This document shows positions 1 to 34,459 of a DNA stretch of 34,459 bases, piece by piece (positions within the stretch are counted from its first letter, which is position 1; each line of letters opens with the position of its first letter). The notes under the pieces are model-generated. The model was not told the DNA's origin. It did not search any database and saw only the letters and a program-made list of their open reading frames with translations. A program made the position numbers and the translations under genes. The stretch is from Neoechinorhynchus agilis (Eukaryota > Animalia > Acanthocephala), in contig JBMGUZ010000026.1 in the NCBI GenBank assembly GCA_051530055.1, forward strand, positions 1 to 34,459. The letters run 5' to 3'.

Positions 1-28
1 TCATATTTACTGCTATGAACTAGCAAAC

Positions 29-229
29 ATGACCCAGTTTCGTGAAAAAATAAATGACCAGGATTGCGATTGTACCCTCAGGTCACACAAGCAGATGAAG
101 ACGCCTCGCATGGAGAATCGAGCTCGAGGGAAAAGAAGAGGGAGGCCCAAAAAGAGGTGGAAGGACAGTGTGAGCAGAGATTTCAAGACGCTGGGAAAGG
201 AGAACAAAGACGAAAACCGACAGTGCTGA
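29..229 (+). mobile_element. RTE-clade non-LTR retrotransposon, ORF C-terminal remnant
   Basis: Translation contains GKRRGRPKKRWKDSVSRDFKTLG, matching the G-x-R-x-RGRP-x-x-RW-x-D-x-V-x-x-D C-terminal motif of RTE elements; no RT core present. Confidence 0.6.
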
Positions 230-244
230 AAAGAACGACCTCTC

Positions 245-650
245 AAGTGAGAGAAAAGTTCAAAGAAATGTTGTTATTGGCGATTACTGATTGATCATTG
301 CACGACGAAGTCTGCGTTCTTATTAGAAGGAAAATTCTACGACCAGACGAACGGAGTGGCAATGGGATCACCGCTAGGACCAGCGATGGCCAACATCTAT
401 ATGATCGAATATGAGAATCAATCGAAATAAACAGTTCAATAATAAAGTTCGAGTGTGTAACAATTCGCCATTGAGAATACACATCCAATCTAAGAACAAT
501 TGGATGGAAAATTGGCGACGAAATCCATTGTAAAGAATCATAGAAGGTTCTTCAAACTTTCAGCATTAATTCTTTTTAAAACATTTCTGGCAATTGCCCT
601 TTGAGATTTGTCCATGTGAAATGGCAGATTATGAATCGGAATGGAGTTTA
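245..650 (+). mobile_element. Penelope-like element (PLE) reverse transcriptase remnant
   Basis: 302-430 reads TTKSAFLLEGKFYDQTNGVAMGSPLGPAMANIYM, the PLE FYxQxxGVAMGSPL..LANxxM motif; a DGKLATK-like piece follows; stops and frameshifts present. Confidence 0.7.
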
Positions 651-5515: not shown

Positions 5516-5759
5516 AGCTGCACAAAACTATTATGGATCTCATTTCACTAAGCAGCGTTTTCTGCATTTTTTTTATCATTTGTTGCATTGTCAGCTGATT
5601 TTCCTGACCGCATGTATATATTTCTTTTTTTATTAATGTGAATTAGCACTTTCCGCGGGTGGAGAAATTTTATGTTTTACATCAGAAAAGTGATATAACC
5701 ACAATGTCTTTAATGCACGGTTAAAAGTTTGTAGATTTCGCCGGATCCTCAGATACCGC

Positions 5760-6015
5760 CAGGGAAGGCGGGACTCATCAGTGAGTTTCCTCCCTTCATG
5801 GAGATATTTCGTCCCTTTGGTTGTGGGTGATTGGCGATGGTGGATCCGAACCCTTTGACCCTGAAACAGGGATCCGGGGCACGAGTCCAATAGACCACCT
5901 CCACAAACAGTTCACACTTCGAGCTATTGAGCTCAACGCCGATTTTGCAGCTTCCCTCATGACGACCTCCAAATCTTGCAACACGACGGACGGAGACCCA
6001 CCGAGTGTTTTTCAG
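5760..6015 (-). mobile_element. CRE-like RT fragment within the tandem unit (also ~6858-7113 and ~7736-7990)
   Basis: VLQDLEVVMREA, IGVELNSSKCELF and VPRIPV...SPI correspond to the post-YLDD region of the CRE copy at 17.6-17.8 kb. Confidence 0.65.
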
Positions 6016-6021
6016 ACTTGA

Positions 6022-6164
6022 ATGAACACTGTCCTTAATAGAGTCAACGCGACTCTATCATTCACCACTACGGTGATGGGAGTTCTCGCATTTGCCATAT
6101 TTGTGACAACGGCTCTCGAAAATGGCCGCGACCAAGTTCGGATTGAAGGCATAGCTGGCGAAAG
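6022..6164 (+). pseudogene. SPCS3: Signal peptidase complex subunit 3, isolated exon 1 (copy 1)
   Basis: MNTVLNRVNATLSFTTTVMGVLAFAIFVTTALENGRDQVRIEGIAGER aligns with the SPCS3 N-terminus [31 protein letters not shown]; no downstream SPCS3 exon found; donor altered in this copy. Confidence 0.8.
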
Positions 6165-6299
6165 GGTAAAAACTGTAATCCGAAACTCGATACTTTATTT
6201 GTTGTTGTTACAAAAACTCTCCATTTTTAGTGGTCACGTGCACTCGTTTTCGCTCTCGTAGCGCTAATCTTCTAATGAGTCTATTTATCTTTACAGTAT

Positions 6300-6720
6300 T
6301 CTCGTTCTGCTAATCAGCGCCACGACGACTGAGGCATTTGCGCTTTATTGTCCTAACGAAACGCGCGGATTGACTCAGTTCCATCGATTGGAGAGAATAT
6401 CGTAGAGCTCCCATTGAAAGGTCTTTAGTGAACTGCGGCGTTTTTTTTGAGCACCATCAATCCAATGGGTCAAAACGGCGACTCCTCTGATTCTGCCGTG
6501 GCGACTTTGACGTCATGAATTGAGATCGATTACCCTTTATACAAGCAAGCATTGAATTCCAACAATACGAGATTGTAATAATCAACTAGGGCCAGAAATG
6601 GATTCCTCGTCAGAGCATTTTGAACCATCATCACACGACAACCGGACGACGTCAAATTCAATGATGATGACGCAAAAGCTCTACAACAACACGCCGAGGT
6701 ATTGAACCTCCGGGCCACCT
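6300..6720 (-). mobile_element. Possible decayed hAT transposase fragment in the tandem unit (also ~8290-8740, partial ~7400-7600)
   Basis: Minus-strand GV(A/T)VLTHWIDG..KRRS resembles the hAT GVTxHWID motif; VAT-like upstream and DNKAQM (TDNxxNM-like) downstream; many stops. Confidence 0.4.
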
Positions 6721-7119
6721 CTTCTCTAAAAGGTTTTTGTTCGCTCCCAAAAGGGTAATTGGGCCTCGCAGCAAATAGATTTCTAAGAAAAGCTCACATA
6801 ATAGTCTGAACTACACGTTTTTGAGTCTGTAAATTTCTCCGGATCCAAAGATACCGCCAGGGAAGGCGTGACTCATCAGTGAGTTTCCTCCTTTCAAGGA
6901 GATATTTCGTCCCGTTGGTTGTGGGTGATTGGCGATCGTGGATCCGAACCCTTTGACCCTGAAACAGGGATCCGGGGCACGAGTCCAATAGACCACCTCC
7001 ACAAACAGTTCACACTTCGAGCTATTGAGCTCAACGCCGATTTTGCAGCTTCCCTCATGACGACCTCCAAATCTTGCAACACGACGGACGGAGACCCACC
7101 GAGTGTTTTTCAGACTTGA

Positions 7120-7262
7120 ATTAACACTGTCCTTAATAGAGTCAACGCGACTCTATCATTCACCACTACGGTGATGGGAGTTCTCGCATTTGCCATATTT
7201 GTGACAACGGCTCTCGAAAATGGCCGCGACCAAGTTCGGATTGAAGGCATAGCTGGCGAAAG
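7120..7262 (+). pseudogene. SPCS3: SPCS3 exon 1, copy 2 (start codon mutated ATG>ATT)
   Basis: Near-identical to copy 1; followed by GTTAAA donor after 143 nt. Confidence 0.8.
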
Positions 7263-7996
7263 GTTAAAACTGTAATCCGAAACTCGATACTTTATTTGTT
7301 GTTGTTACAAAAACTCTCCATTTTTAGTGGTCACGTGCATTCGCTTTCGCTCTCGTAGCGCTAATCTTCTAATGAGTCCATTTATCTTTACAGTATTCTC
7401 GTTCTGCTAATCAGCGCCACGACGACTGAGGCATTTGCGCTTTATTGTCCTAACGAAACGCGCGGATTGACTCAGTTCCATCGATTGGAGAGAATATCGT
7501 AGAGCTCCCATTGAAAGGTCTTTAGTGAACTGCGGCGTTTTTTTGAGGACCATCTATCCAATGGGTCAAAACGGCGACTCCTCTGATTCTGCCGTGGCGA
7601 CTTTTTTTGTTCGCTCCCACAAGGGTAATTGGGCCTCGCAGCAAATAGATTTCTAAGAAAAGCTCACAAAATCACATAGTGGTCTGAACTACACGTTTTT
7701 GAGTCTGTAAATTTCTCCGGATCCTCAGATACCGCCAGGGAAGGCGGGACTCATCAGTGAGTTTCCTCCTTTCAAGGAGATATTTCGTCCCTTTGGTTGT
7801 GGGTGATTGGCGATCGTGGATCCGAACCCTTTGACCCTGAAACAGGGATCCGGGGCACGAGTCCAATAGACCACCTCCACAAACAGTTCACACTTCGAGC
7901 TATTGAGCTCAACGCCGATTTTGCAGCTTCCCTCATGACGACCTCCAAATCTTGCAACACGACGACGGAGATCCACCGAGTGTTTTTCAGACCTGA

Positions 7997-8139
7997 ATGA
8001 ACACTGTCCTTAATAGAGTCAACGCGACTCTATCATTCACCACTACGGTGATGGGAGTTCTCGCATTTGCCATATTTGTGACAACGGCTCTCGAAAATGG
8101 CCGCGACCAAGTTCGGATTGAAGGCATAGCTGGCGAAAG
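7997..8139 (+). pseudogene. SPCS3: SPCS3 exon 1, copy 3 (ATG and GT donor intact)
   Basis: 143-nt exon ending AG|GTTAAA, phase 2 in codon 48. Confidence 0.8.
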
Positions 8140-8845
8140 GTTAAAACTGTAATCCGAAACTCGATACTTTATTTGTTGTTGTTACAAAAACTCTCCATTT
8201 TTAGTGGTCACGTGCATTCGCTTTCGCTCTCGTAGCGCTAATCTTCTAATGAGTCTATTTATCTTTAAAGTATTCTCGTTCTGCTAATCAGCGCCACGAC
8301 GACTGAGGCATTTGCGCTTTATTGTCCTAACAAAACGCGCGGATTGACTCAGTTCCATCGATTGGAGAGAATATCGTAGAACTCCCATTGAAAGGTCTTT
8401 AGTGAACTGCGGCGTTTTTTGAGGACCATCTATCCAATGGGTCAAAACGGTTACTCCTCTGATTCTGCCGTGGCGACTTTGACGTCATCAATTGAGATCG
8501 ATTACCCTTTATACAAGCAAGCATTGGATTCCAACAATACGAGATTGTAATAATCAACTGGGGCTAGAAATGGATTCCTCGTCAGAGCATTTTGAACCAT
8601 CATCACTCATCACACGACAACCGGACGACGTCAAATTCAATGATGATGACGCAACAGCTCCACAACAACACGCTGAGATATTGAGCTTCCAGGCCACCTC
8701 TTCTCTAAAAGGTTTTTGTTCGCTCCCACAAGGCAAATAGGGCCTCGCAGCAAATAGATTTCTATAAGAAAAGCTCACAAAATCACATAATAGTCAGAAC
8801 CACACGTTTATGAGTCTGTAAATTTCTCCGGATCCTCAGATACCT

Positions 8846-10461
8846 CATCTTAGATTAATCTATTTGACACCAATAGAAGTAGCCCTTTAATATCAGTACT
8901 TGATGTTGCTTTTCTTGTATACCGTTCAAGAGCTTCGCTTTAGAATTTTTCTTAACCTATTTGAGTTACGGTCATCTTCTTTGTTAAATTTTAGATAATT
9001 TTTCTTAACCTATTTGAGTTACGGTCATCTTCTTTGTTAAATTTTAGCGCTCCAAATTCATCGATTGATCTTCCATAATCGTCTTCATCGATAGTTTCAA
9101 TTGGCAGTTGAAGCGCATTGCTGCCGACCATCCATCGATCTTTGTGGTTGTTCGCCGTCTTTCTCGGTGTCAATCAGCTCTCCAAACTGATCGATTGAAC
9201 GGTCCCACCCATCATTATCATCGTCATTGGCAGTTGAAGCGCTTTGCTGCGGACCGTCCATCGATCCCTGTGATTGTTCGCGGTCTTGCTCGGTGTCAAT
9301 CAGCTCTCCAAACTGATCGATGGAACGACTCATTGATTGAATTTCCACAATCATCTTTATCATCTTCATCATCCATTGGCGAGCTTCGTTTTCTCATTTT
9401 CCTTGGGTTATGGTCGTCTTCTTGATCAAATTTTAGCGCTCCAAGTTCTTCGAGTGAACTTAACCAATCCCCTTCATCCTCTTCATTAATATTTCCTGCC
9501 GTTAGTTTACGGATTTCCATTACTCTCAGCGATTTATGTTCTTCAACTGTTGCTGTGTTTTGTTTTGTGATTCCTTTTATCCTCTGAGGTTCATATTTCT
9601 TCTCGTCGACAATATTAACATCTTTTTGGATGTTTCCGTTTTTCCATTGGTTTTTTTTCTAAATTCAATTATTCTCTGCGCATTATTTAAAATTTGGTCT
9701 TCGTTTGTAACAATTAATTGTTTCATTTCATTTGCGACTTCTTTGGCTTCAACTATTCTCTCATTCCAAAGCATTTCGGAATCTTGATTTTGTTCGACAG
9801 CTTCCATTTTTTTATCGCTTTGATAACGAAGCTCGGCTACTAATATTAACCATTCGCATTGATCGCTTTTAAAACACCTTTTGCGTTTTTTCTCCGATTC
9901 GATTTCAGATTCATCATCCGACTTCCTTTTTCTTGGCTCTCTGGCCACGTCTCCAGGTTCTTCAAATTCCTCGTCGATTTCCATTTCTTCATTCATTGAT
10001 TCTCCATTATCCTTGTCATTTTCATAAACTTCGAAACTCATCATTGATTGTATCGCCGGGAACCGTTCTACAAACTTTATCATCTCATTTGAAAGTTCCT
10101 CTTTCACCTTTCTCTTCATTCCATCTCGTTGGATTCCATTTTCCATCGTCTTTTTTAAATCTACTTTCCCATAATTCTTCATGTAACTGCGAAAACTTTT
10201 CGCAATTTCCTTAATAATCTCATTAAAGCCGTCCGTTCCTGCCATTTCCGTTTCCTGTTCTGCTTCTTCGATCACCTCAACAAATTGTGTCTGAATCGCT
10301 TTTTCCATTGACCTTTTTGTCCGTTCCTTTGCAAGCCAATCGCAAGCATCATTATTGACGCCGAAGATATTGCCATCCGATCCATAATTTCAAGAGTTCA
10401 ATAATACGTTAATTGTTTCAGTAATTGAAAGCGCGAAATTTGCTAAAAATCTTTTCTCTGT
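8846..10461 (-). pseudogene. Orphan multicopy gene, copy A (N-terminal hydrophobic segment, acidic coiled-coil region, 42-aa repeats); disrupted
   Basis: ORF pieces 9577-10308, 9296-9520, 9097-9372 and 8991-9173 match copies B and C; ~37-bp deletion in the hydrophobic segment; ~53-bp tandem duplication at 8945-9047. Confidence 0.8.
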
Positions 10462-11030: not shown

Positions 11031-11541
11031 CGAACGTCCGCCAACCGATTCTGCTCGGAAGCCCCCCCGGAGCGAAATTACCATTTTCGGTGGGTTCTTG
11101 ATTAGTGCATTTTTTCAAGATCGAAGATAGAACGAAATTTTTTGATTTGTTTAAGCAAAAAATCTTATTTGTTAATAACTCATAAATATTGCAGCAGTGA
11201 GTTCTAAACATTTGGAATGGACAAAATGAAAGCCATTAAATTTTTTATTTACTGTTCCAATGGACGGTCGCCTTCAACGATTAGAAAACTACTAAAATCC
11301 GCTGATCAATAAACATGAACTCAATAGTCATTTTATTCACAAGAATTTATTTTTCTTGACAATCTTAAAAATGTAGATTCAATTTTCTTACGTTATTCTT
11401 TTTCTCGAATTCAAAAATAATTTCGTTCCAATGATTTCACATTTATTCGGTCAATTTTAAACCTAACAATTGCAAAGATCTTCCCCCGACGCCTTTACTG
11501 ACGAAGGCTCTAAATTTTATTGAATTCTCTACATTCAATGC

Positions 11542-12876
11542 CTAAGAAGCTTTCCTTTTCCTGTCGATTTCCTCGTCCACAGGAGCTGATCGTTTCCGCG
11601 GTTCCGTCCGCGAGTTACAACTCGCAGCGGCCATCATCGCTACGGAATTCCGCCCACGCATCGGAAATGCAGCCCTCATTTTAATTGTAATTTTATCGAT
11701 TCGGTTACTATGGCGTCCGTTATTAATGTTGAATTTAACATCGTGAAGAAGTTTTCCAAGCTGATTATCCCGGATATCATCTTGCGTGATGTTTTTCTGG
11801 GCCATGGCTTTAAATATTCGTATTGCCAGCGCTTGGTTCTTTACCGTCGAATCTTCCTCGAGGTTTCTCCGCAGCACGGCGCAGAGTTGCTCCAAGCTCA
11901 TTTCTGCATTCACTTCAATCTTTTCTCTAGATTTCTTAGTTCTTTTGTTCGAAGAACTTTTATCATTTGTTGACCGCGGCTTCTTTTCTGAATGTACTTT
12001 TGCTTCTCGGACAATGAAATCATCTGGATGAATTAATTTCCGCTTTCGAGATTTGGTCGCATCTTTAGTAAAATCGCATTCCTTTTTCTTTTCTGCTTTT
12101 CGACATAATTGCTTTAGTTTTATCAGGACTTCTTTAATAATTTTACTTGTGGCTTCATCACTTTCATTTTTGGCCATTTTTTCTATAACTTCTACAATCC
12201 CAGATTCTTCAATTTCAGCTTTAGTTGTGTTTCTTAAGATAATCTTCGCAAGGATTTGACGGACCCACGCAGTGTTGGTCACGGCAAACTGTTCGTTCAA
12301 TCCGCAATGCAGTCTTTTACGCAGGGACTTTAGTGAACCTGAAACAGCCGTAGAGTATCGTTCAATCCAACGTCCTTCGCCGATATAAACGGCAGTTTTG
12401 CCGGATTCGGTTGGTGCTTTTTGTTCAACTTCACCGTTGATTTGCGAAGAGGCATCCACTTCACTTTCGGAAGCTTCATCCGTTTTAGGGAGATTGGAAG
12501 GCATCGTCGGCTTAAAAATTATTTTAGGCAATCTTTTTAACAGCTTTGCTTTTTTTGCCTCGTACTCTTGGGACTCGTCGTTCGCTCGTTTCTCATTTTC
12601 TAATTTTATCTTTTCCGCTTCGATTTGAGGGTCAACTTTTGAAGTCTTACCATCACGTTTTAGAATTACCTGCAATCTGTACTTGATTTTTTCAAGGGAC
12701 AGAATAATCTCCTCGTTGCCTTTTTCATTCATCATTTCATCAATTATTTCTAAAATACGCGATTCACGAATTTCATTGGCTGTTATTGGCCGCCTCATAA
12801 ACTCTCCGATATTAGCTCGCGCGTACATCCAATTGACGTCCTTTGAATGAATCGAGTCGATGAGTAGGTGGATCAT
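11542..12876 (-). CDS. Intronless 444-aa protein with three putative TFIIS-N-terminal (TND / LEDGF IBD-like) helical domains and basic linkers
   Basis: Long open frame; three ~75-aa segments share the pattern (I/T)T..(E/D)I.(E/D)..(I/L), e.g. ALAIRIFKAMAQKNITQDDIRDNQLGKLLHDVK; NLS-like KRK motifs. Confidence 0.65.
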   Translation of the reverse strand: MIHLLIDSIHSKDVNWMYARANIGEFMRRPITANEIRESRILEIIDEMMNEKGNEEIILSLEKIKYRLQVILKRDGKTSKVDPQIEAEKIKLENEKRANDESQEYEAKKAKLLKRLPKIIFKPTMPSNLPKTDEASESEVDASSQINGEVEQKAPTESGKTAVYIGEGRWIERYSTAVSGSLKSLRKRLHCGLNEQFAVTNTAWVRQILAKIILRNTTKAEIEESGIVEVIEKMAKNESDEATSKIIKEVLIKLKQLCRKAEKKKECDFTKDATKSRKRKLIHPDDFIVREAKVHSEKKPRSTNDKSSSNKRTKKSREKIEVNAEMSLEQLCAVLRRNLEEDSTVKNQALAIRIFKAMAQKNITQDDIRDNQLGKLLHDVKFNINNGRHSNRIDKITIKMRAAFPMRGRNSVAMMAAASCNSRTEPRKRSAPVDEEIDRKRKAS

Positions 12877-13351
12877 TTAAAGGAAAAAAAGATCTCCCAA
12901 AGTTAATTAGAAGATTCGTTAGTGCGAATTTAAGGACAATATTGATTATTGCCATCTGCGGACGGAGTGCAACAGATTTTCCGATCATGTTTCTTATCAA
13001 TGTAATGTCCTGCTCCATATCGATTTCATTGGTTTTCTTAAATATAACCAGGTACTTTTCAGAGACGAGTATTGAACACTCATCCCTGCCTGTGGCGAAA
13101 TCGCTTAGTGAGTAAACCACACGACCACCGTTGTATACAGTTCGGTACTTGAATTCTTTTTCAAGAGCATTTGCCATTTTCAATATCGCTTTTTTAATTA
13201 TAATTCGCTGTTTTAATGAAGATAAGACGTTTTCTCCGTTTGGGTTAGTGACACCCAAACCTCTATCTTTATCTTCAATCTTCACATCGTACTGCTTTAC
13301 TCTGAAAGGAGTTGAGTTGGTCAGTGGAAAATAATTGATCATCATTTTCAT
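12812..13351 (-). pseudogene. Argonaute N-domain fragment, truncated before PAZ
   Basis: INYFPL, QYDVKI, YNGGRVVYS and INIVLK..L..FGRSFFP follow the Argonaute N / linker-1 motif order; no PAZ, MID or PIWI; a Q/G-rich stop-broken stretch lies upstream (~13500-13670). Confidence 0.75.
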
Positions 13352-13904
13352 CGACTTATTTAATTTAATTTTTGTACAGTAAACATTTTTGGACGTGTTC
13401 CAACGCTGCGTTCTTGTCGCAGGGTATCTATTTCTAAACCCTAAAAATCATTAGGCTTAAAAATATGGTTCGACATTATGGGATTCATCTATCGACATAT
13501 TAATTATTTTGCTTTCTTCATTATATTGTTTTTGTGGTTCTGCATCGTTCCCCCTTTGACCTTGATTTCTCTGGTACTGTCCATGATTTTGGCATCTCCC
13601 GCCTCGATCTAACTTTATGTTTATTTATCCTCCAATTTTCTCTCTATATCGTCATGAGTGCTAACCGCTAACTGAATCAATGGATTTTCTCTAATTATTT
13701 AATCATCAACAACATAATAATCGAAATTATAGCAGCGATTTTGTATTTATGAGGCGCTAAAACGAAATAAAAACATGTAATTAAAGCCAGAACTCGAAAA
13801 TCCAACTTTAATGTAAGACTTTAAACTGTGCAATAATTTTATTTACAGAAAACACAGAAACTCTTGCAGCGTTTTAGGCTGCAGTAAAACTCGAACGAAC
13901 TCGC

Positions 13905-15077
13905 CTAGTTGTTCAGTTGCGAGTCGTCCATTGTATTGGCATGTTCGCTATTTTGTCCATTCGTTGTATCCTCTGATTGTCCGTTTGATTTATCAAATAC
14001 CAACAAATGCGATAAAGATTTTTCCAATGGTTTCAATCCATACGACTTTTTAATCGATAGCTTCACCACAAATGATTGTCGCGAAACGTCGTAGCCAATA
14101 ATCTTTGCGATTAGTCGTTCCTTTTGTGCGAATCGAGTGTCCATTTGCCGAAACCGATACTCTAACGGTCCTTGAGCCATTTCTTTAGTTGAACATCCAT
14201 CCAAATGACACTTAAAAATCGTCTTTCGAATAGCGAGTATCGATGGGGAAGCAACGTAGCACATTAATTTAGAAACAAACCGTATCTTTCCGGAATCTAC
14301 TTCTTCGACAAGAAATCTATGACCCTGGTCCTCCAGGATCTTTACTCTTTTGAATGATTTATCGGAATCTTTGACGAGACAATAATGGCCAGGATAAAGT
14401 TCTCTCGATACCTCCTCAGCGTGACGTCCATTTAAATTAATTAATTCTCGATTCAGATAAGTTCGCCATTCCTGGACAAATTGGGTTATAAAAATATTTT
14501 CAATGTTGCAGAAGTGCACTAGCTTATAAATAATTTTGATATTAATCAAATACTTGCCGTCCTCGTCCTTTCTTATAAAATCACAAAAGACATTCCCTTC
14601 AAACGCTGCCTCGGGAACTTGTGAGTGGTTTTGATTTGCAAGTACGAAATTGCCATCTTGGTTTTCCAATTTCAATTTACATGGAAGGGCCAGCCTTGGA
14701 ATGGAGTTGAAGATTCTTTTAACCGGTCGTAGATTTACCAATGGAAGCCACTCTTGGTGACCGTAATCAATGTAAAAGACTTTGAATGAAGATGTCAGAA
14801 TATTCACTTCTGTAATTTGACCCCGGTACCACTTTCCGTCCACAAGGGACTTGCCAATACATTTGGAATTAAGACCATACACAAGAAATTGATTGAAACG
14901 AAGAGATTCATAAACATTTCGTAGACCGATCTCAAGATCCAATCGATTTTTGAAGATTAAATTTGGTAGAAGGTAAATATTTTGAGGATTATCCATGTAA
15001 CTGACTTGACAATAGACTGAATCTTGTACAGAAACTATAAACTGCGGGTAATCGGCTGGAGGTACAAAAGTGCTCAT
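13905..15077 (-). CDS. Tandem extended-Tudor domain protein (390 aa, intronless CDS)
   Basis: DGKWYRGQI...FKVFYIDYGHQE followed by IPRLALPCKL is a canonical extended Tudor; a second degenerate copy reads DKSFKRVKI..FLVEEVDSG..IRKTIFKCHL; a possible 43-nt 5' UTR intron lies just upstream. Confidence 0.85.
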   Translation of the reverse strand: MSTFVPPADYPQFIVSVQDSVYCQVSYMDNPQNIYLLPNLIFKNRLDLEIGLRNVYESLRFNQFLVYGLNSKCIGKSLVDGKWYRGQITEVNILTSSFKVFYIDYGHQEWLPLVNLRPVKRIFNSIPRLALPCKLKLENQDGNFVLANQNHSQVPEAAFEGNVFCDFIRKDEDGKYLINIKIIYKLVHFCNIENIFITQFVQEWRTYLNRELINLNGRHAEEVSRELYPGHYCLVKDSDKSFKRVKILEDQGHRFLVEEVDSGKIRFVSKLMCYVASPSILAIRKTIFKCHLDGCSTKEMAQGPLEYRFRQMDTRFAQKERLIAKIIGYDVSRQSFVVKLSIKKSYGLKPLEKSLSHLLVFDKSNGQSEDTTNGQNSEHANTMDDSQLNN

Positions 15078-15204
15078 TATTGATGATTTTCTGTAAGAAT
15101 AATTTTAGTCAAGAAGCCGATCTAACTGTATACTTTCAAAGATAGAAGCAATATAAAGCTTGTGAGTGAAAAGAATAAAGGGGATACTTTATCTTGCTAA
15201 GCGT

Positions 15205-15630
15205 TATAAAATTTCAGCCAATCAGCGTGTGCATAACAGCGGGGCACCGGTATAAAATAGGAAATAAACCCTAAAAATAATTAATCATCACGTGCCGCTT
15301 TTGTTTTTACCCGTGTAATGGACGCTTTATCTTTGAATTTAATTATATATTTTGTTTGAATTATTAATTTGTTTTACACCCTTTGGATTTTTATATCATC
15401 ACCAGGTTGTTATTTTATGCAATTTCTAAAGTAGTTATTTAAGTTATCATTCTATTTAATTATTTGCTCAAATGGTGCGTATAAATTGCTTTCTCTATTT
15501 TTAAGGTTCAAGATCAATTTCAATTCCTAGAATAAATGGCATGAGACTTGTCTTAAATGTGTGATTTTGTTTCTCATTCTTAAAACGGCATCCAGCTGTG
15601 AATTGCATGCTGATTGGCTTAATTTTCTAT
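15205..15630. repeat. Imperfect ~45-bp inverted repeats about 400 bp apart (MITE-like or paired CCAAT modules)
   Basis: AGCCAATCAGC at 15216-15226 and its exact reverse complement at 15609-15619, with looser similarity on both sides. Confidence 0.45.
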
Positions 15631-16128
15631 GTGGCGTGCAATAATCCTCAAAAAAATTAACTGGACGAAACATGCATTTGTAACGAACAAGTTTAAAAGA
15701 AGCATTGCGATAGCTTTAATCGGTGTCGCCGAAACGTGATTTCTGTCTGGTGTTCTGAATGTTAAAGTGAAGAAACTCATTGAAACGTTAGGAAACGATG
15801 CTGCTCCGAGACTTAGACTTTCAAGGAAGATAAAAGAAGTCTCGCTAAATTACGACAGTTCAAACTCACGAAAAAATAAAGAAACTCAACGTCGCAATGT
15901 GCGGAATAAAGAGAAGACTTTATATAAATGATTATTACGTTTGATGAAGTTCAAATCAAAGAGATTTTGGAAACTTTTTAACGCTGAAAAACTTTGTGAG
16001 TGAATTTCGATGCTTTCGCCGCAATAAAACAGAAAAAGTGACTAACAGCTTTAAGCCGAAGACAGCGATTAAGTTCGTTACAAATCGCGCAGGTTGATGG
16101 CCATAACATTCAATAAACACTGTGACCT

Positions 16129-16505
16129 TTAGTATTTATTTCGCAAAACCGCCGGAACAGTGAGTTGTTCGCCCGCTAACAAATCTCGAACGGTGAAAAG
16201 AGCCATTGCTTGTCTGTCTGTTCCATTAGATTTAAAGTGAACCTTCTGAATGAGCAAATTGGCATTGCTCTGAGAGCGATGAAAAAGATGAGACACGTTG
16301 GTGATCGACGCTACGTTTCCATTTCTCTCCGTATCGCTGTCCTGTTGACAAACAAGATAACCCTTTGGAAGATCGTGGTTCACACGGACACCCAATCTTT
16401 TAGTTCTATGAACAAATACCTCCAAATAAGCTCGAATTTCTTGACTGACCAATGTGTTTGGACAGTGCCCTGGACATTTACACGCATCGCCACATTTTTT
16501 GAACT
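16129..16505 (-). pseudogene. Pre-SET/SET histone methyltransferase fragment (SUV39/G9a/SETDB1/SETMAR family), degenerate
   Basis: KKCGDACKCPGHCPNTLVSQEIRAYLEVF...LGVR...DLPKGYLVC, GNVA, NLLIQKV and ALFTVRDLLAGEQLT; SET-I deleted, NHSC motif and post-SET lost. Confidence 0.75.
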
Positions 16506-16509
16506 CTCA

Positions 16510-18096
16510 ATTGTCGCCCGAATGCTTGCAGTGTTGCCTCTCAATACGGCGATGCTGATATTTTGAACCAGGTATTGACCTTGCATCACCGGTTGTAACA
16601 TGAAGGCGTCGCTTCAGATCCTTCAGAAGTTGAAGAGCCTCGCTACCAAGAGAACCGTAGGTCTCAACCCCAAAAGGCACAAACAAGTGGGCCCAGGACA
16701 AATCGAGGTATTTCGTCGTTTTCCGTCTTTCGGCAGCGCTCAACCACCGAGAACTTGAGATTGCTGGCCGCGAGTGTATCGACACAGTGGCGTCCCAGAG
16801 GAGGCATTTACCTTCCCGCCACGGAAATGCGGTCACCCAGTCAGGTCTAAGCCCGTCGTCCTTACAGAGGTTAACAGGTTCCAAAATATTGGGGGTATTT
16901 ACCGCATAACAAGTGCCCGGCTCAGCACAATGTTAATTTCGGAATGTCTTGCTAATCTGCCGGCTGATTTTCAACAGATGAGACCGTGACGTCCCGACGA
17001 ATCCACATTTGCACCGCAGCTGCAACGGTGGGGTCGACACATCGGTAGTCCTAATCTCATTGAAACTCCGAGCAGTACTGCCTCGTCGAAGGGGAAAATA
17101 CCAACAGATGCAAACGGGACTGCATTCAACCAAGCACCTGATTCTCTAGTGGAGACTGCCAACAACCTGGCACGGACAACGTCGTCGCTGTACTTGATCG
17201 GAATTGGTCAGTGTACACCACTCACTGATTCCCTCTTCAAAATGCCTATCAAGACGATAAGTAGATTTCAAAATGCGCTGAACTGCGCTTCCCTCACAGG
17301 AGCCTAGAAATTTGGGCAGGGATATGTCTGCTGTTTTCCGGATGCCCAACCCTCCAGAAGATACAGGCAAGGATGCTCGTCGCCATGCCTCTTCTGGCAG
17401 CTGGACATTTAAAACTTGCTCGAGATAGTCCTTCAATCCGTCATCTCGCTTGCCACGCTGAACCTTGTGATTGAAAAACGGCGCAGTGCGTAGAGCGTAA
17501 AGGAACTTGGGGATGAAGAGGGTATTCTTTATCAAGAACAGAACCTCGTGTGATCCAAGCTCACAGACCCTATCGCAAAGCATCGATAATTTCGCTAGAA
17601 GGCAGTTAATTTCGTTTTTTACATTCCCATCAAAGACCCAACTGCCGAAAAGCTTAAGCCGGTCTAAGTCGATCATTTCTATCCTGGGGGGAACATTTTC
17701 AAAGTCGCGATTTTTTACGTCTTTTGCAGGGCTCGTCTCTATTTTAAGGAATAGAATTTCGAACTTTTCTGTGCTCAATTCAATGCCCAGCTTGCTTCCC
17801 CCATCTTGATTTTCTCCAGGTCACGGCCTCCCTGCGTAGCATCGTCCAGGTACCAAGCATTGAATTCGGCATCAGGAGAATGCGCTAATTCGTTTATTGT
17901 GAGCGCGAAACCAATGGGACCTAACGAGTCTCCCTGCTGAACGCCTCGTTCGGAAGGAATGATGTGATCGTGTCGCAGCTCAGAGCCTTTAATAGCGAGT
18001 TACGATTAACGGAATTGAAGGCGTTCCGGAAATCTAATTTCAGGATCACACACGGTTTATCGTTCTCAATAACAAATGTGCGGAGTGCGCTGTAGA
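16510..18096 (-). mobile_element. CRE-clade non-LTR retrotransposon, copy 2 (RT + zinc knuckle + RLE), frameshifted
   Basis: LDFRNAFNSV, GVQQGDSLGP, WYLDD, CSCGANVDSSGRHGLIC, RPDWVTAFPWREGKCLLWDAT, FVPFGVETYG and ISIAVLRGNTASI. Confidence 0.9.
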
Positions 18097-18363
18097 TCTA
18101 TCAAATATTCAATTAATCAAATGCCTTCCGAACCGCTAATCGACAACGACAATGGAAAAAATCGATAATGCATAGCACATCCCAACATTTGATATGGCAA
18201 AGGTATGAAGAATCTCCAGAATTTAATTTGAATTTCAATCTCTTCAAAAATCCACAAAACAAACAAAGTTACCTTCTTCAACTTCACTGTCTAATTATGT
18301 GCGCCTCCTTTAAATGTCTTATAATGCCATGGATGAAGATTTCTCCGTTCGACAACTTTAACC

Positions 18364-20237
18364 ATCTTAGATTAATCTATTTAACACCAATAAAAGTAGC
18401 CCTTTAATATCAGTACTTGATGTTGCTTTTCTTGTATACTGTTCAAGAGCTTCGCTTTAGAATTTTTCTTAACCTATTTGAGTTAAGGTCATCTTCTTGG
18501 TTAAATTTTAGCGCTCCAAATTCATCGATTGATCTTCCACAATCGTCTTCATCGATAGTTTCAGCGCATCGTTTCCGCGTGTTCTTGGATGCCTGTGATT
18601 TATTGCGGTCTTTTTCGACATCCATCAGGTTTCCCAAATGATCGATTGAACGGCCCCACCCATCGTTATCATCTTCAATGGCAGTTGAAGCGCTTTGCTG
18701 CCGACCGTCCATCGATCCATGTGATTGTTCGCCGTCTTTCTCGGTATAAATCAGCTCTCCAAACTGATCGATTGGACGGCCCCACCCATCTCTATCGTCT
18801 TCATTGGCAGTTGAAGCGCTTTGCTGCCGACCGTCCATCGATCCCTGTGATTGTTCGCCGTCTTTCTCGGTATAAATCAGCTCTCCAAACTGATCGATTG
18901 AACGGCCCCACCCATCGTTATCATCGTCATTGGCAGTTGAAGCGCTTTGCTGCCGACCGTCCATCGATCCCTGTGATTGTTCGCCGTCTTTCTCGGTATC
19001 AATCAGCTCTCAAAACTGATCGATTGAACGGCCCCACCCATCGTTATCATCGTCATTGGCAGTTGAAGCGCTATGCTGCCGACCGTCCATCGATCCTTGT
19101 GATTGTTCGCTGTCTTCCTCGAGATCCCTCAGCTTTCTAATTTCATCGATTGAATTTCCACAATCATCTTTATCATCTTCATCATCCGTTGGCGAACTTC
19201 GTTTTCTAATTTTCCTTAGGTTATGGTCGTCTTCTTGATCAAATTTTAGCGCTCCAAGTTCTTCGAGTGAACTTAACCAATCCCCTTCACCCTCTTCATT
19301 AATATTTCCTGCCGTTCGTTTACGGAATTCCTTTACTCTCAGCGAGTTATGTTCTTCAACTGTTGCTGTGTTTTGTTTTGTGATTCCTTTTATCCTCTGG
19401 GGTTCATATTTCTCTTCGACAATATTAACATCTTTTTGGATGTTTCCGTTTTGCCATTCGTTTTTGTTTCTAAATTCAATTATTTTCTGCGCATTATTTA
19501 AGATTTGGTCTTCGTTTGTAACAATTAATTGTTTCATTTCATTTGCGAATTCTTTGGCTTCAACCTTTCTCTCATTCCAAAGCATTTCGGAATCTTGATT
19601 TTGTACGACAGCTTCCATTTTTTATCGCTTTGACAGCGAAGCTCGGCTACGAATATTGACCATTCGCATTGATCGCTTTTAAAACACCTTTTGCGTTTTT
19701 TCTCCGAATCGATTTCAGTTTCATTATCTGACTTCCTTTTTCTTGATTCTCTGGCCACGTCTCTTGGTTCTTCAAATTCCTCGTCGATTTCCATTTCTTC
19801 ATTCACTGATTCTCCATTATCCTTGTCATTTTCATAAACTTCGAAACTCATCACTGATTGTATCGCCGGGAGCCGTTCTACAAATTTTATCATTTCATTT
19901 GAATGTTCCTCTTTCACCTTTCGCTTCATTCCATATCGTTCAATTCCATTTTCCATCGTCTTTTTTTAAATCTACTTTTTCATAATTCTTCATGTAGCTG
20001 CGGAAACTTTTCGCAATTTCCTTAATAATCTCATTAAAGCCGTCCGTTCCTGCCATTTCCGTTTCCTGTTCTGCTACTTCGATCACCTCAACGAATTGTG
20101 TCTGAATCGCCTTTTCCATTGAACTTTTTGTCGGTTCCTTTGCATGCTGCAATCTTCTACTCACCGCTGAACCAATAATGAAGCCAATCGCAAGCATCAT
20201 TATTGACGCCGAAGATATTGCCATCCGATCCATAATA
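18364..20237 (-). pseudogene. Orphan multicopy gene, copy B (four 126-bp repeat units)
   Basis: ORF pieces 19940-20281, 19534-19956, 19010-19618 and 18443-18964; frameshifts at A-runs and a GGA>TGA stop at 19010-19012. Confidence 0.8.
18640..19130 (-). repeat. In-frame 126-bp (42-aa) tandem repeat, about 4 units
   Basis: Unit DDDNDGWGRSIDQFGELIYTEKDGEQSQGSMDGRQQSASTAN recurs every 126 bp (18661, 18787, 18913, 19039). Confidence 0.95.
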
Positions 20238-21239
20238 GAATTATGATTTCGTGAGCATGTCTCCTCTATTTTCATGATCATTTATCCTTCAAATAAACGC
20301 CGTTTAGCACTTACGATCTATCAGAAACATTTCAAATCACTTTGTTTGTAAGTAAGCTTCTATGACATTGCTTCGTCAGTTTCTGCCTTCCATCAGACGT
20401 TCGCGAAGAGCAGAACGTCGAAAGTTTGACTCGCTTCAGTTTGAGGTTATTAAATAAATGCCATGAGTTTCGTTTTGGAAGCGAAGATTCCAAAGGATGA
20501 AGACCATATAAATTCAGTGACTCCGCAGAAGCAAAACAAAGCGATGGATTTGAAAGTAATAAACTTGAATCATATTAAAAAAATAAAGATTTAAATTTTT
20601 AATTCTACATTTCTGTGATAATTAGTGACACTGGAAAAAACGGTTTGCCGAAGTTTTGTGCAACGAACTAAAATGAGACCATTACAAAACAAGATCTTTA
20701 AATACTAAGACAATTCAATAGGCATCATTTTCCACCCCACGTTCAAAAAAGCGTCTGTCGCTGTAAATAGTTCGTTGATTGTGACCGCTTTGAAAGCTCC
20801 TCGATATCCGGAGCGTATTCTTTAGGTATCTTCGATGTTGTTGATTTCTACCCACCTCCGTTCAGGAAAGGAGACCTCTGAAAATCGAAGTTTCTTGTGC
20901 TGGCTATTTTGATTATTAAAACAACAAACCTGGATCTTGTGAATCGTTTAGAACTTGGCATGGGACCACACTTAGAAAACTACAACATTCAAAAGAAGCC
21001 CTAGCGCGACGGGTGGCTCTGTGTCCTTTACGAAGTCACAGAAGAGTTGCATTTCTGTTTTGGATGCGCAAAAGTTGAGAAGAGATTCCATCGAACGGCG
21101 TGCGGGAAAGATATCTTTTTGAAAACTCATCTCTCCATCATTACCAATGGTTGTGATGAATATTTCGAGGCCTCAGGTAGTATCCAGTACGGTTTGTAAG
21201 TTTTATACGATGGAGAAATGTGTGGTAGAAATTGAAGAC

Positions 21240-32480: not shown

Positions 32481-32988
32481 TAATGAACCAGTATTCTACT
32501 TTTCCTCTCCTTCTAACCCTAACTTCAGCGCACAATACTCCCACGCAATTCGATTGGAATTCAACGATGCACACATTTTTTTACAATAAGCAATTTCTTA
32601 ATTGATAAAGATAGGAAAAGGTTAATGGATAGAAAGTAATACTACCAGGATAAAAGATTAATCTGGTCTTTTGGTCCTCCGAGGTGGTCTGAGATCGACC
32701 TAATACCTGAGGCCCAATAGAGCAGACGAAGGACCAACGATAACTGCTAGACTAACGAAAAACCCTAATTGTTATCTTACTAGTTGTATCAAAATCCAAT
32801 GCAAAAATGTACAAAACGGTCCTCTGCGTTCATCTTTTTTTCATTGAACAAACTGATGAACCAACGAAACGATTTGCTTTATGAGAGAACCCAAATTGAT
32901 TGATAATTGATTCTCCCAATTACCAGGTTAGTTGAGTCGCCGTAGCTCTTGGAATACAAAAAAATGTTATTGTTCCCAAATATCAACC

Positions 32989-34450
32989 ACAGAGGAAAGA
33001 TTTTTAGCAAATTTTGCGCTTTCAATTACTGAAATAATGAACGTATTATTAAACTCTATTGAAATTATGGATCGGATGGCAATATCGTCGGCGTCAATAA
33101 TGATGCTCGCGATTGGCTTCATTATTGGGTTAGCGGTGAGTAGAAGATTGCAGCATACAAAGTAACGGACAAAAAGTTCAATGAAAAAGGCGATTCAGAC
33201 ACAATTTATTGAGGTGATCGAAGTAGCAGAACAGGAAACGGAAATAGCAGGAACGGACGGCTTTAATGAGATTATTAAGGAAATTGCGAAAAGTTTTCGC
33301 AGCTACATGAAGAATTATGGGAAAGTAGATTTAAAAAAGACGATGGAAAATGGAATCCAACGAGATGGAATGAAGAGAAATGTGAAAGAGGAACTTTCAA
33401 ATGAGATGATAAAGTTTGTAGAACGGTTCCCGGCGATACAATCAATGATGAGTTTCGAAGTTTATGAAAATGACAATGATAATGGAGAATCAGTGAATGA
33501 AGAAATGGAAATCGACGAGAAATTTGAAGAACCTGGAGACGTGGCCAGAGAATCAAGAAAAAGGAAGTCAGATAATGAAACTGAAATCGATTCGGAGAAA
33601 AAACGCAAAAGGTGTTTTAGAAGCGATCAATGCGAATGGTTAATATTAGTAGCCGAGCTTCGCTATCAAAGCGATAAAAAAATGGAAGCTGTCGAACAAA
33701 ATCAAGATTCCGAAATGCTTTGGAATGAGAGAAAGGTTGAAGCCAAAGAAGTCGCAAATGAAATGAAACAATTAATTGTTACAAACGAAGACCAAATCTT
33801 AAATAATGCGCAGAGAATAATTGAATTTAGAAAAAAAACCAATGGAAAAACCGAAACATCCAAAAAGATGTTAATATTGTCGACGAGAAGAAATATGAAC
33901 CTATGAGGATAAAAGGATTCACAAAACAAAACACAGCAACATTTGAAGAACATAAATCGCTGAGAGTAAAGGAAATCCGTAAACGAACGGCAGGAAATAT
34001 TAATGAGGAGGGTGAAGGGGATTGGTTAAGTTCACTCGAAGAACTTGGAGCGCTAAAATTTGATCAAGAAGACGACCATAACCCAAGCAAAATGAGAAAA
34101 CGAAGCTCGCCAACGGATGATGAAGACGATAGAGATGGGTGGGGCCGTTCAATCGATCAGTTTCGAGAGCTGATTGATACCGAGAAAGACGGCGAACAAC
34201 CACAAGGATCGATGGATGGTCGGCAGCAATGCGCTTCAACTGCCAGTTGAAACTATCGATGAAGACGATTGTGGAAGACCAATCGATGAACTTGGAGCGC
34301 TAAAAATTAACAAAGAAGATGACCGTAACTCAAATAGGTTAAGAAAAATTCTAAAGCGAAGCTCTTGAACGGTATACAAGAAAAGCAATATCAAGTACTG
34401 ATATTAATGGGCTACTTTTATTGGTGTCATATAGATTAATCTAAGATGAG
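32989..34450 (+). pseudogene. Orphan multicopy gene, copy C (one 126-bp unit), inverted relative to A and B
   Basis: ORF pieces 32932-33165, 33181-33906, 33903-34250 and 34174-34368 are collinear with copies A and B. Confidence 0.8.
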
Positions 34451-34459
34451 GTATCTGAG

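What the first reader, a model, noticed from the sequence alone, without database searches (positions are those of the whole stretch)
11542..16505. Co-oriented cassette of small-RNA/heterochromatin domain genes: 3xTFIIS-N, Argonaute-N, 2xTudor, pre-SET/SET
Seen: four consecutive minus-strand units within 5 kb, all with intronless coding regions, whereas MTPAP in the same window has 8 introns. The block sits between two copies of the orphan gene and is bordered by PLE and CRE remnants. Known: Argonautes, extended Tudors (binding methyl-arginine in Argonaute/PIWI tails), SUV39-family SET enzymes and TND elongation scaffolds all act in RNA-guided transcriptional silencing. Inference: this enrichment is unlikely for randomly captured genes. 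It could be a lineage-specific silencing module, or a selfish or mobile region that collected non-catalytic fragments of the silencing machinery as decoys or suppressors. Two ORFs are long and open, while the two catalytic-family members are crippled.
Basis: partly seen in the sequence, partly recalled or inferred. Interest (0 to 1): 0.8.

Follow-up and report, generated by a model that had tools for sequence, protein, structure and literature searches.

The report
Decayed copy of Tudor–Argonaute–TND cluster
The four domain calls are right, but this stretch is one worn-down copy of a repeatedly duplicated block of gene-silencing genes (dead SETDB1-like, double Tudor, Argonaute, triple-TND protein) in the thorny-headed worm Neoechinorhynchus agilis. 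The Argonaute and SET "fragments" are deletion and insertion leftovers, not collected decoys.

Summary
On the minus strand of this unplaced 34-kb contig lie four units.
- A pre-SET/SET remnant (16505-16129).
- A 390-aa tandem extended-Tudor ORF (15077-13905).
- An Argonaute N-domain remnant (13606-12839).
- A 444-aa ORF with three TFIIS-N-terminal-type (TND) repeats (12876-11542).

The same co-oriented order, SETDB1-like, Tudor, AGO, TND, recurs in whole or part in at least nine other loci of the assembly. One locus has MORC upstream.

The window copy is decayed.
- A 3.1-kb deletion removed Argonaute L1 to PIWI together with the TND gene's start codon and upstream region.
- A non-LTR insertion shared with a chromosomal copy cut off the 5' part of the SETDB1-like gene. 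Its SET motifs are already dead in all four copies that retain the SET region.

Across copies, Tudor (dN/dS 0.13-0.27) and TND (about 0.35-0.5) show purifying selection. The Argonaute remnant does not (0.76).

RNA contigs cover the family, but the diagnostic bases and junctions point to other copies. The only strand-informative splice is antisense to Tudor.

Verdict: this is a real, lineage-specific, amplified cluster of silencing-type genes. The window holds a largely degenerate member. The decoy and mobile-cargo readings are not supported. The scan's first readers noted sister copies on other pieces of this genome.

The parts
16129..16505 (-). Remnant of a SETDB1-like gene: the end of pre-SET (CxC...C motif) plus a shortened SET region. 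The NHSC and ELxFDY-Tyr motifs are replaced and there is no post-SET. The 5' part is cut off at 16506 by a non-LTR insertion.
   Evidence: Pfam SET 22.2 bits. tblastn to L003/L010 copies, aa 42-164, 86-94% identity. Longer copies carry Tudor_5, Tudor_4, MBD and Pre-SET. Alignment of four copies, dN/dS 0.43-0.98.
15078..16128 (-). Spacer between the SET remnant and Tudor. It is conserved among copies (0.2-4.9% divergence) and covered by RNA contigs.
13905..15077 (-). Intact 390-aa ORF, a tandem extended-Tudor protein. Domain 1 core is about aa 72-118 and domain 2 core about aa 232-275.
   Evidence: Pfam TUDOR E 1.4e-19. PDB sequence hits to SND1, Tudor and TDRD1. AF2 and Foldseek, best match 4q5y. 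dN/dS 0.13-0.27 against intact sister copies.
14973..15015 (+). A 43-nt GT..AG intron on the plus strand, antisense to the Tudor ORF. It is seen in RNA contigs of two runs and in none of the DNA reads.
   Evidence: table 5. Sequence read.
12839..13606 (-). Argonaute pseudogene remnant, equivalent to aa 17-282 of the intact 980-aa paralog. It has lost the start, carries an in-frame stop and indels upstream, and contains the 179-aa open ORF 13351-12812 that starts at an internal Met.
   Evidence: 2 stops in the L003 frame, dN/dS 0.76; ArgoN 24.4 bits.
12838..12848 (-). Junction of a 3.1-kb deletion relative to L001 6988-10100 and L004 11538-14625. The deletion removed Argonaute L1-PAZ-MID-PIWI, the AGO-TND spacer and the first 33 codons of TND.
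   Evidence: DNA and RNA loose ends at 12837 and 12849 continue into the undeleted paralog sequence.
11542..12876 (-). A 444-aa ORF, the triple-TND protein. Only 12837-11545 is homologous to the family (aa 34-464 of the 464-aa form). Its first 13 codons are read from Argonaute-derived DNA in another frame. Repeat 1 remnant 12837-12643, repeat 2 12342-12085, repeat 3 11904-11647.
11067..11541 (-). 3' flank of the TND gene, shared by all copies. Homology to L001, L002, L004, L006, L008 and L009 ends at 11066-11092.
16507..18089 (-). Non-LTR retrotransposon remnant inserted into the SETDB1-like gene. The insertion is shared with chromosomal copy L007 (98.65% identity over 13013-18089).
   Evidence: Related elements carry RVT_1.
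9577..10308 (-). Orphan gene copy downstream of TND. Further copies lie at about 19393-20119 (-) and 33181-33909 (+). It also lies near the TND and Tudor copies in L006 and L007.

Best explanation
SHOWN. The stretch is one decayed copy of a block that has been segmentally duplicated many times in Neoechinorhynchus agilis. The duplicates lie in an array around 7.19-7.36 Mb of chromosome CM121342.1, on several unplaced contigs, and once on CM121341.1.

The fuller form of the block reads, all on one strand:
- (MORC), seen upstream in one locus only.
- A SETDB1-like gene (Tudor_5/Tudor_4, MBD, pre-SET, and a SET without catalytic motifs).
- A tandem extended-Tudor gene.
- An intronless AGO-clade Argonaute with an RG-rich N tail and an intact DEDH tetrad.
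- A protein made of three TFIIS-N-terminal-type domains.

In the window copy three things have happened.
- A 3.1-kb deletion fused the Argonaute N-domain region to codon 34 of the TND gene, out of frame. This removed the TND promoter region and start codon.
- A non-LTR insertion removed the 5' part of the SETDB1-like gene.
- Only the Tudor ORF is fully intact.

INFERRED. The ancestral block is a lineage-specific small-RNA/chromatin silencing gene cluster. In this reading the eTudor protein would dock on methyl-arginines of the Argonaute's RG tail. The multi-TND protein would act as a scaffold towards the Pol II elongation machinery.

Tandem amplification followed by decay, as in fast-evolving defence-type loci, then produces copies like this one. 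Here the Argonaute and SET pieces are pseudogene debris. Tudor, and possibly TND, may still be usable.
For: Organism and paralogs.

Gene order in other loci:
- L009: TND | 144-aa gene | Tudor | AGO.
- L004: Tudor fragment | AGO | TND.
- L003: SET | Tudor | AGO, 980-aa single ORF.
- L010: MORC | SETDB1-like | Tudor | Tudor.
- L001, L002 and L008: AGO or an AGO remnant, then TND.
- All are mapped together by tblastn.

Deletion junction. Shared TE insertion and 98.65% identity to L007.

Selection:
- Tudor dN/dS 0.13-0.27 (binomial p 3e-5 to 1e-3).
- TND 0.35-0.5 (p about 1e-4).
- AGO-N remnant 0.76 (not significant).

Domain identities.

Copy number: about 16x read depth at the window's private bases, against 90-170x over Tudor at 99% or higher identity.

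Transcription of the family: RNA contigs cover most of the block, while 11282-11472 is silent in all three RNA runs.
Against: Functional coupling of the genes is not shown. All copies descend from one block, so recurrence is not independent evidence. An older Argonaute paralog (60% identity, L012) and the distant multi-TND paralog (L011) have no such neighbours.

The RNA contigs carry the bases of other copies at 14520, 14537 and 14553. They also leave the window at 12837 into undeleted sequence, so expression of this copy is not shown.

The only strand-informative feature is a plus-strand intron, antisense to Tudor. Sense expression of Tudor is therefore not shown either.

In Tudor domain 1 the aromatic cage is only partly kept: by my reading of the SND1 alignment, Phe is replaced by Leu and the Asn by His. 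Domain 2 has no cage.

Both AF2 models have low overall confidence (pLDDT 46 and 42). Gene conversion among copies (0.2% spacer divergence against 1-2.4% in adjacent coding parts relative to L007) can distort dN/dS.
Confidence: 0.75

Rival explanations
1. The window copy is itself a working module. In this reading the 179-aa Argonaute-N protein and the SET stub are expressed as non-catalytic regulators or decoys alongside Tudor and TND.
For: The 179-aa and 107-aa ORFs are still open. The SET stub keeps the same stop codon in four copies. RNA contigs overlap both regions.
Against: The AGO-N region has lost its start, has an upstream in-frame stop and indels, and gives dN/dS 0.76. Both pieces are explained by a deletion and a TE insertion. 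RNA contigs at the diagnostic junction belong to undeleted copies. The SET dN/dS between the window and L007 is 0.98, on few changes.
Confidence: 0.08
2. The block is cargo of a large mobile element, or a selfish region, that captured silencing-machinery genes to blunt host defence.
For: It is multi-copy. The genes are intronless and co-oriented. The block is embedded in retroelement remnants, and many copies sit on unplaced repeat-rich contigs.
Against: Copy boundaries differ from locus to locus. No transposase, integrase or RT is found in a constant position. The RT fragments are separate insertions at different sites. Most copies cluster in one chromosomal region, as expected of tandem or segmental duplication. 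Other host genes here are also intron-poor.
Confidence: 0.05
3. The ancestral neighbourhood arose by chance. Unrelated genes that happen to carry chromatin or RNA domains were then copied together, with no functional link between them.
For: All copies trace to one block. Older paralogs of AGO and TND lack the neighbours. Tudor, SET and helical-bundle domains are common.
Against: Four to five adjacent co-oriented genes all belong to classes that act in small-RNA-guided heterochromatin: AGO, eTudor, SETDB1-like and MORC, plus a transcription-elongation scaffold domain. The Argonaute has an RG-rich tail of the kind eTudors bind. This is a post-hoc argument, not a test.
Confidence: 0.12

Closest known systems
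Extended-Tudor proteins of the piRNA pathway (Drosophila Tudor eTud10-11, TDRD1, SND1, Papi, Krimper)
   Same: Pfam TUDOR E 1.4e-19. The best structural match is a tandem eTudor pair, followed by sDMA-peptide-binding eTudors.
   Different: It is a small two-domain protein with no other domains. The cage is incomplete in domain 1 and absent in domain 2, by my reading of the sequence. It is only 21-30% identical to anything outside N. agilis.
AGO-clade, Ago2-like (siRNA-type) Argonautes
   Same: The intact paralog has N-L1-PAZ-L2-MID-PIWI and the DEDH tetrad. Its best PDB matches are human AGO1-4. It has an RG-rich N tail, as Ago2-type and PIWI proteins do.
   Different: It is very divergent (about 32-40% identity to other animals, 40% to Pomphorhynchus) and intronless. 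In the window only aa 17-282 survive, as a pseudogene.
TFIIS N-terminal domain (TND) proteins: MED26, TFIIS, Elongin A, IWS1, PPP1R10, LEDGF
   Same: The repeat profile matches the MED26 TND over its whole length (E 2.4e-07). The predicted fold is a five-helix bundle with TNDs as top Foldseek hits.
   Different: To my knowledge, known TND proteins carry one TND. This family carries 2-5 in tandem and nothing else. It was found only in N. agilis among 1.84 billion cluster representatives.
SETDB1/Eggless H3K9 methyltransferase
   Same: The fuller copies have Tudor_5/Tudor_4, MBD, pre-SET and SET in that order.
   Different: The SET is shortened. The NHSC and catalytic-Tyr motifs are replaced and post-SET is absent in all four copies that retain the SET region. 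Frames are broken between parts, and the window keeps only the last 125 codons.
Rapidly duplicating defence-type gene arrays (for example expanded WAGO or Ago2 families, and pseudogene-rich tandem arrays)
   Same: There are many near-identical copies. Intact and broken members are mixed, the copies are mosaic or gene-converted, and TE insertions are present.
   Different: Here a whole multi-gene block is the unit of duplication, rather than a single gene.

Membership tests
TND (TFIIS N-terminal domain, Pfam PF08711 Med26) | Sequence-profile match to a TND | tested here: met
   The single ORF is below the Pfam cut-off (11.8 against 20.6 bits). phmmer to the MED26 TND gives E 0.005. A profile of 15 family repeats against the MED26 TND gives E 2.4e-07 over 70-74 of 85 positions.
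TND (TFIIS N-terminal domain, Pfam PF08711 Med26) | Five-helix bundle fold | tested here: inconclusive
   AF2 repeat 1 has pLDDT about 70-82 with five helices. Repeats 2 and 3 score lower. Eight of Foldseek's top 10 hits are TNDs, but E-values are 0.15-0.85. In the window copy, helix 1 of repeat 1 is deleted.
TND (TFIIS N-terminal domain, Pfam PF08711 Med26) | Binds TND-interacting motifs of elongation factors | not testable with these tools
   Needs binding assays.
Argonaute (AGO clade) | N-L1-PAZ-L2-MID-PIWI architecture | tested here: not met
   The window keeps only the part equivalent to aa 17-282, with stops. The architecture is met in paralog L003 (Piwi E 1.5e-76, plus ArgoN, L1, PAZ, L2 and Mid).
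Argonaute (AGO clade) | DEDH catalytic tetrad | tested here: not met
   It is deleted in the window. It is present in L003 and L012 by alignment with other animal AGOs.
Extended Tudor (sDMA reader of PIWI/AGO tails) | Tudor core plus SN-like extension, here in tandem | tested here: met
   Pfam E 1.4e-19 with 2 stretches. Foldseek gives 83 hits at E<=0.001, the best being eTud10-11 over 403 columns. The model is of low overall confidence, and domain 2 alone gives E 0.035.
Extended Tudor (sDMA reader of PIWI/AGO tails) | Aromatic cage (four aromatics plus Asn) | tested here: inconclusive
   In the SND1 alignment, domain 1 keeps the three Tyr positions but has Leu for Phe and His for Asn. Domain 2 lacks them. 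This was read by eye, not structurally verified.
SETDB1/Eggless (SUV39-type SET methyltransferase) | Tudor_5/Tudor_4 + MBD + pre-SET + SET architecture | tested here: not met
   The window has only the pre-SET tail and the SET stub. Fuller copies L010 and L003 show Tudor_5 (32.1 bits), Tudor_4, MBD (28.5 bits), and weak Pre-SET and SET, but in broken frames.
SETDB1/Eggless (SUV39-type SET methyltransferase) | Catalytic NHSC motif, Tyr of ELxFDY, post-SET | tested here: not met
   All four aligned copies read HRSQSN and (Q/E)LTVPAV, then stop.
Cargo of a mobile element | Constant termini, target-site duplications and an element-encoded mobility enzyme in a fixed position | tested here: not met
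   Breakpoints differ among nine loci. RT fragments lie at different places. Only the fetched loci were examined.

The most novel reading that the evidence does not exclude
N. agilis carries a lineage-specific, tandemly amplified 'silencing supergene'. In it, an RG-tailed slicer Argonaute, a tandem eTudor reader, a new kind of multi-TND scaffold, a catalytically dead SETDB1-like protein and MORC are kept together and act in one nuclear small-RNA pathway. The decayed copies, such as this window, would be transcribed antisense and feed back on the intact copies as sources of double-stranded RNA.
Probability: 0.2. Interest if true: 0.75.

Novelty: new variant of a known kind. Interest (0 to 1): 0.5.

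Why it matters
Genes of the animal small-RNA and heterochromatin machinery are normally scattered across the genome. Here an Argonaute, an eTudor reader, a SETDB1-like gene, MORC and an unprecedented multi-TND protein lie side by side, and the block as a whole is the unit of duplication.

If the linkage is functional, it points to a direct tie between an Argonaute and the Pol II elongation machinery in a phylum that keeps piRNAs but lacks Dnmt1/3 (PMC12256650). It would also give a natural series of intact and broken copies for studying how such modules are born and decay.

The multi-TND family is a new domain architecture in its own right.

For genome annotation the result is practical. Several gene models in this array, such as the 437-aa Tudor-plus-AGO fusion, the split AGOs and the 396-aa TND of this contig, are pseudogene pieces.

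Tried and rejected
- Single-sequence Pfam scans left TND, ArgoN and SET below their cut-offs.
- phmmer of the ArgoN ORF against PDB found nothing relevant. Its identity came from paralogs instead.
- I looked for the cluster around an older Argonaute paralog (L012) and around a distant five-TND paralog (L011). No Tudor, AGO or TND neighbours were found, so ancient conserved linkage is not shown.
- An exhaustive HMMER search with the TND protein found relatives only in N. agilis.
- Both AF2 models came out with low overall confidence. They were used only for domain-level fold ranking.
- Private-substitution counts for the window's own branch are too few to test selection on this copy: 2 synonymous to 3 non-synonymous for TND, and 2 to 1 for Tudor.
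- Read laying at 99% identity could not show whether the window's own junction is transcribed.
- Paper searches found no description of this cluster.
- I did not test the CRE or PLE identity of the flanking elements, the MTPAP intron count, or synteny in Pomphorhynchus (the contig look-ups were exhausted).
Full report
**What is in the window**

The window is an unplaced 34,459-bp contig of the acanthocephalan Neoechinorhynchus agilis, assembly GCA_051530055.1. Its own Tudor and TND proteins appear in the protein collection as products of a 34,459-bp contig, and close paralogs carry N. agilis names.

- a SET-like stub, 16505-16129;
- a 390-aa ORF, 15077-13905;
- a 179-aa ORF, 13351-12812;
- a 444-aa ORF, 12876-11542.

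**Domain calls**

Tudor is solid.
- Pfam gives E 1.4e-19.
- PDB sequence hits go to SND1, Drosophila Tudor and TDRD1.
- Foldseek on a low-confidence AF2 model gives 83 matches at E<=0.001. The best is the tandem extended Tudor 10-11 of Drosophila Tudor, followed by sDMA-binding eTudors.
- The second domain alone is weak in Pfam (E 0.035), but the model gives it the same strand pattern as the first.

The 444-aa ORF has three repeats of about 85 aa. A profile built from 15 such repeats, taken from this protein and its distant N. agilis relatives, matches the MED26 TFIIS-N-terminal domain at E 2.4e-07. The AF2 model shows five-helix units, and TNDs fill Foldseek's top ranks.

The Argonaute-N and SET calls are sub-threshold alone. 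Homology to fuller paralogs settles both, as described next.

**The block is multi-copy**

I fetched the contigs of the paralogs and mapped all parts by tblastn. The same co-oriented order recurs:
- L003: SETDB1-like remnant, Tudor, a 6-kb insert, then an intact 980-aa single-ORF Argonaute.
- L009: TND | small gene | Tudor | Argonaute.
- L004 (chromosome CM121342.1, 7.31 Mb): Tudor C-fragment | Argonaute broken into five ORFs | TND.
- L001: Argonaute in two ORFs | TND.
- L002 and L008: an Argonaute 3' remnant | TND.
- L007 (7.34 Mb): SET stub | Tudor | Argonaute-N stub.
- L010: MORC | SETDB1-like | Tudor | Tudor.

The fuller SET gene has Tudor_5, Tudor_4, MBD, pre-SET and SET, which is SETDB1 architecture. 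In all four copies that retain the SET region, however, the SET part reads HRSQSN and (Q/E)LTVPAV in place of the catalytic motifs, and there is no post-SET.

The intact Argonaute belongs to the AGO clade. Human AGO1-4 are its best PDB matches. It keeps DEDH, has an RG-rich N tail, and is about 40% identical to a Pomphorhynchus protein and 32-40% identical to Ago2-like proteins elsewhere.

**How the window copy was damaged**

Window 11067-12837 aligns to L001, L004 and L006 at 98-98.5% identity. Window 12849-13780 aligns to the region 3.1 kb further upstream in L001 and L004. The junction alignment shows a clean deletion. It removed Argonaute L1-PAZ-MID-PIWI, the spacer, and the first 33 codons of TND.

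The present TND start codon therefore lies in Argonaute-derived DNA read in another frame, and helix 1 of the first TND is gone.

The Argonaute remnant also lacks its start and has an in-frame stop and indels upstream of the open 179-aa part.

Window 13013-18089 is 98.65% identical to L007, and this stretch includes the non-LTR remnant that truncates the SET gene at 16506. That insertion therefore predates the split of these two copies. The contig is a mosaic of parts whose nearest relatives lie 150 kb apart on the chromosome.

**Selection**

- Among intact Tudor copies dN/dS is 0.13-0.27. For example, window against L003 gives 18 synonymous and 15 non-synonymous changes (p 3e-5).
- Among TND copies dN/dS is about 0.35-0.5 (p about 1e-4).
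- The Argonaute-N remnant against the intact gene gives 0.76 (not significant).
- The SET stub gives 0.43-0.98, on few changes.

Changes private to the window copy are too few to judge. Uneven divergence to L007 (0.2% in the spacer against 1-2.4% in neighbouring coding parts) suggests gene conversion, which weakens the dN/dS inference.

**Reads**

In a WGS run, depth at the window's three private Tudor bases is about 16. Depth at 99% or higher identity over Tudor is 90-170. This copy is therefore real, and there are roughly six to ten near-identical copies.

Three probable RNA runs have contigs over most of the block, but none over 11282-11472. This argues against plain DNA carry-over. The contigs do not, however, point to this copy:
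- They carry the bases of other copies at 14520, 14537 and 14553.
- At 12837 they run on into the undeleted paralog sequence.

A 43-nt joint at 14973-15015 is absent from the DNA reads. It has GT..AG ends only on the plus strand, so it is antisense to Tudor. Family transcription is supported. Sense expression, and expression of this particular copy, are not shown.

**Interpretation**

The evidence fits a lineage-specific cluster of silencing-type genes that has been amplified by segmental duplication and is decaying copy by copy.

The decoy-collection and mobile-cargo ideas are not supported:
- The fragments have simple deletion and insertion origins.
- Breakpoints vary from copy to copy.
- No mobility gene sits in a constant position.

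Functional coupling of the genes remains an inference. All copies descend from one block, and older paralogs of AGO (L012) and of the TND family (L011) lack such neighbours.

The multi-TND family (2-5 TNDs per protein) was found only in N. agilis among 1.84 billion cluster representatives. To my knowledge it is a new architecture.

**Literature and earlier scan notes**

N. agilis is reported to keep PIWI and piRNAs with a ping-pong signature and to lack Dnmt1/3 (PMC12256650). I found no description of this cluster.

First readers of this scan noted sister copies on other pieces of the genome. I saw those notes after my own mapping, and they agree with it.

Noticed in passing
window 14973-15015 (+): A 43-nt GT..AG intron antisense to the Tudor ORF. 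It is present in RNA contigs of two runs (the dominant form in one of them) and in no DNA read. This implies a spliced antisense transcript across a Tudor copy and its upstream spacer.
   Followed up: partly
P0017-P0025; L011 10001-12050: A family of proteins made only of tandem TND-like repeats (five in P0017, four in P0018, two in P0019). There are several near-identical copies on three chromosomes, and the family was found only in N. agilis.
   Followed up: partly
L012 10001-13060: A second intronless Argonaute (1019 aa, 60% identical). It has an about-85-aa RG/RGG-rich N-terminal tail and the DEDH tetrad, and has no Tudor or TND neighbours.
   Followed up: partly
L005 8434-11716: Two head-to-head Tudor paralogs, each about 40% identical to the window's Tudor, at 13.55 Mb of CM121342.1. 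They lie next to Vps4 and DHHC genes, outside the array.
   Followed up: no
L010 3805-5879: A MORC gene (GHKL ATPase, S5 fold, zf-CW) split into two ORFs 33 nt apart. It lies directly upstream of the SETDB1-like gene.
   Followed up: no
window 8835-10460, 18363-20240, 32988-34459: Three copies of the orphan gene region (two direct, one inverted). The copies differ in the number of 126-nt internal repeats. The gene also lies near the TND and Tudor copies in L006 and L007.
   Followed up: partly
window 5680-8850: About three tandem units of roughly 0.9-1.1 kb, 91-99% identical, just upstream of the first orphan copy. The same sequence occurs at the end of L007.
   Followed up: no
window 16495: 46 of 75 DNA reads lack one base of an A-run at the start of the SET stub, so most other copies differ here by 1 nt.
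   Followed up: no
window 1-278: A repeat, 96-97% identical, is also found about 3 kb downstream of the TND gene in L001 and L006.
   Followed up: no
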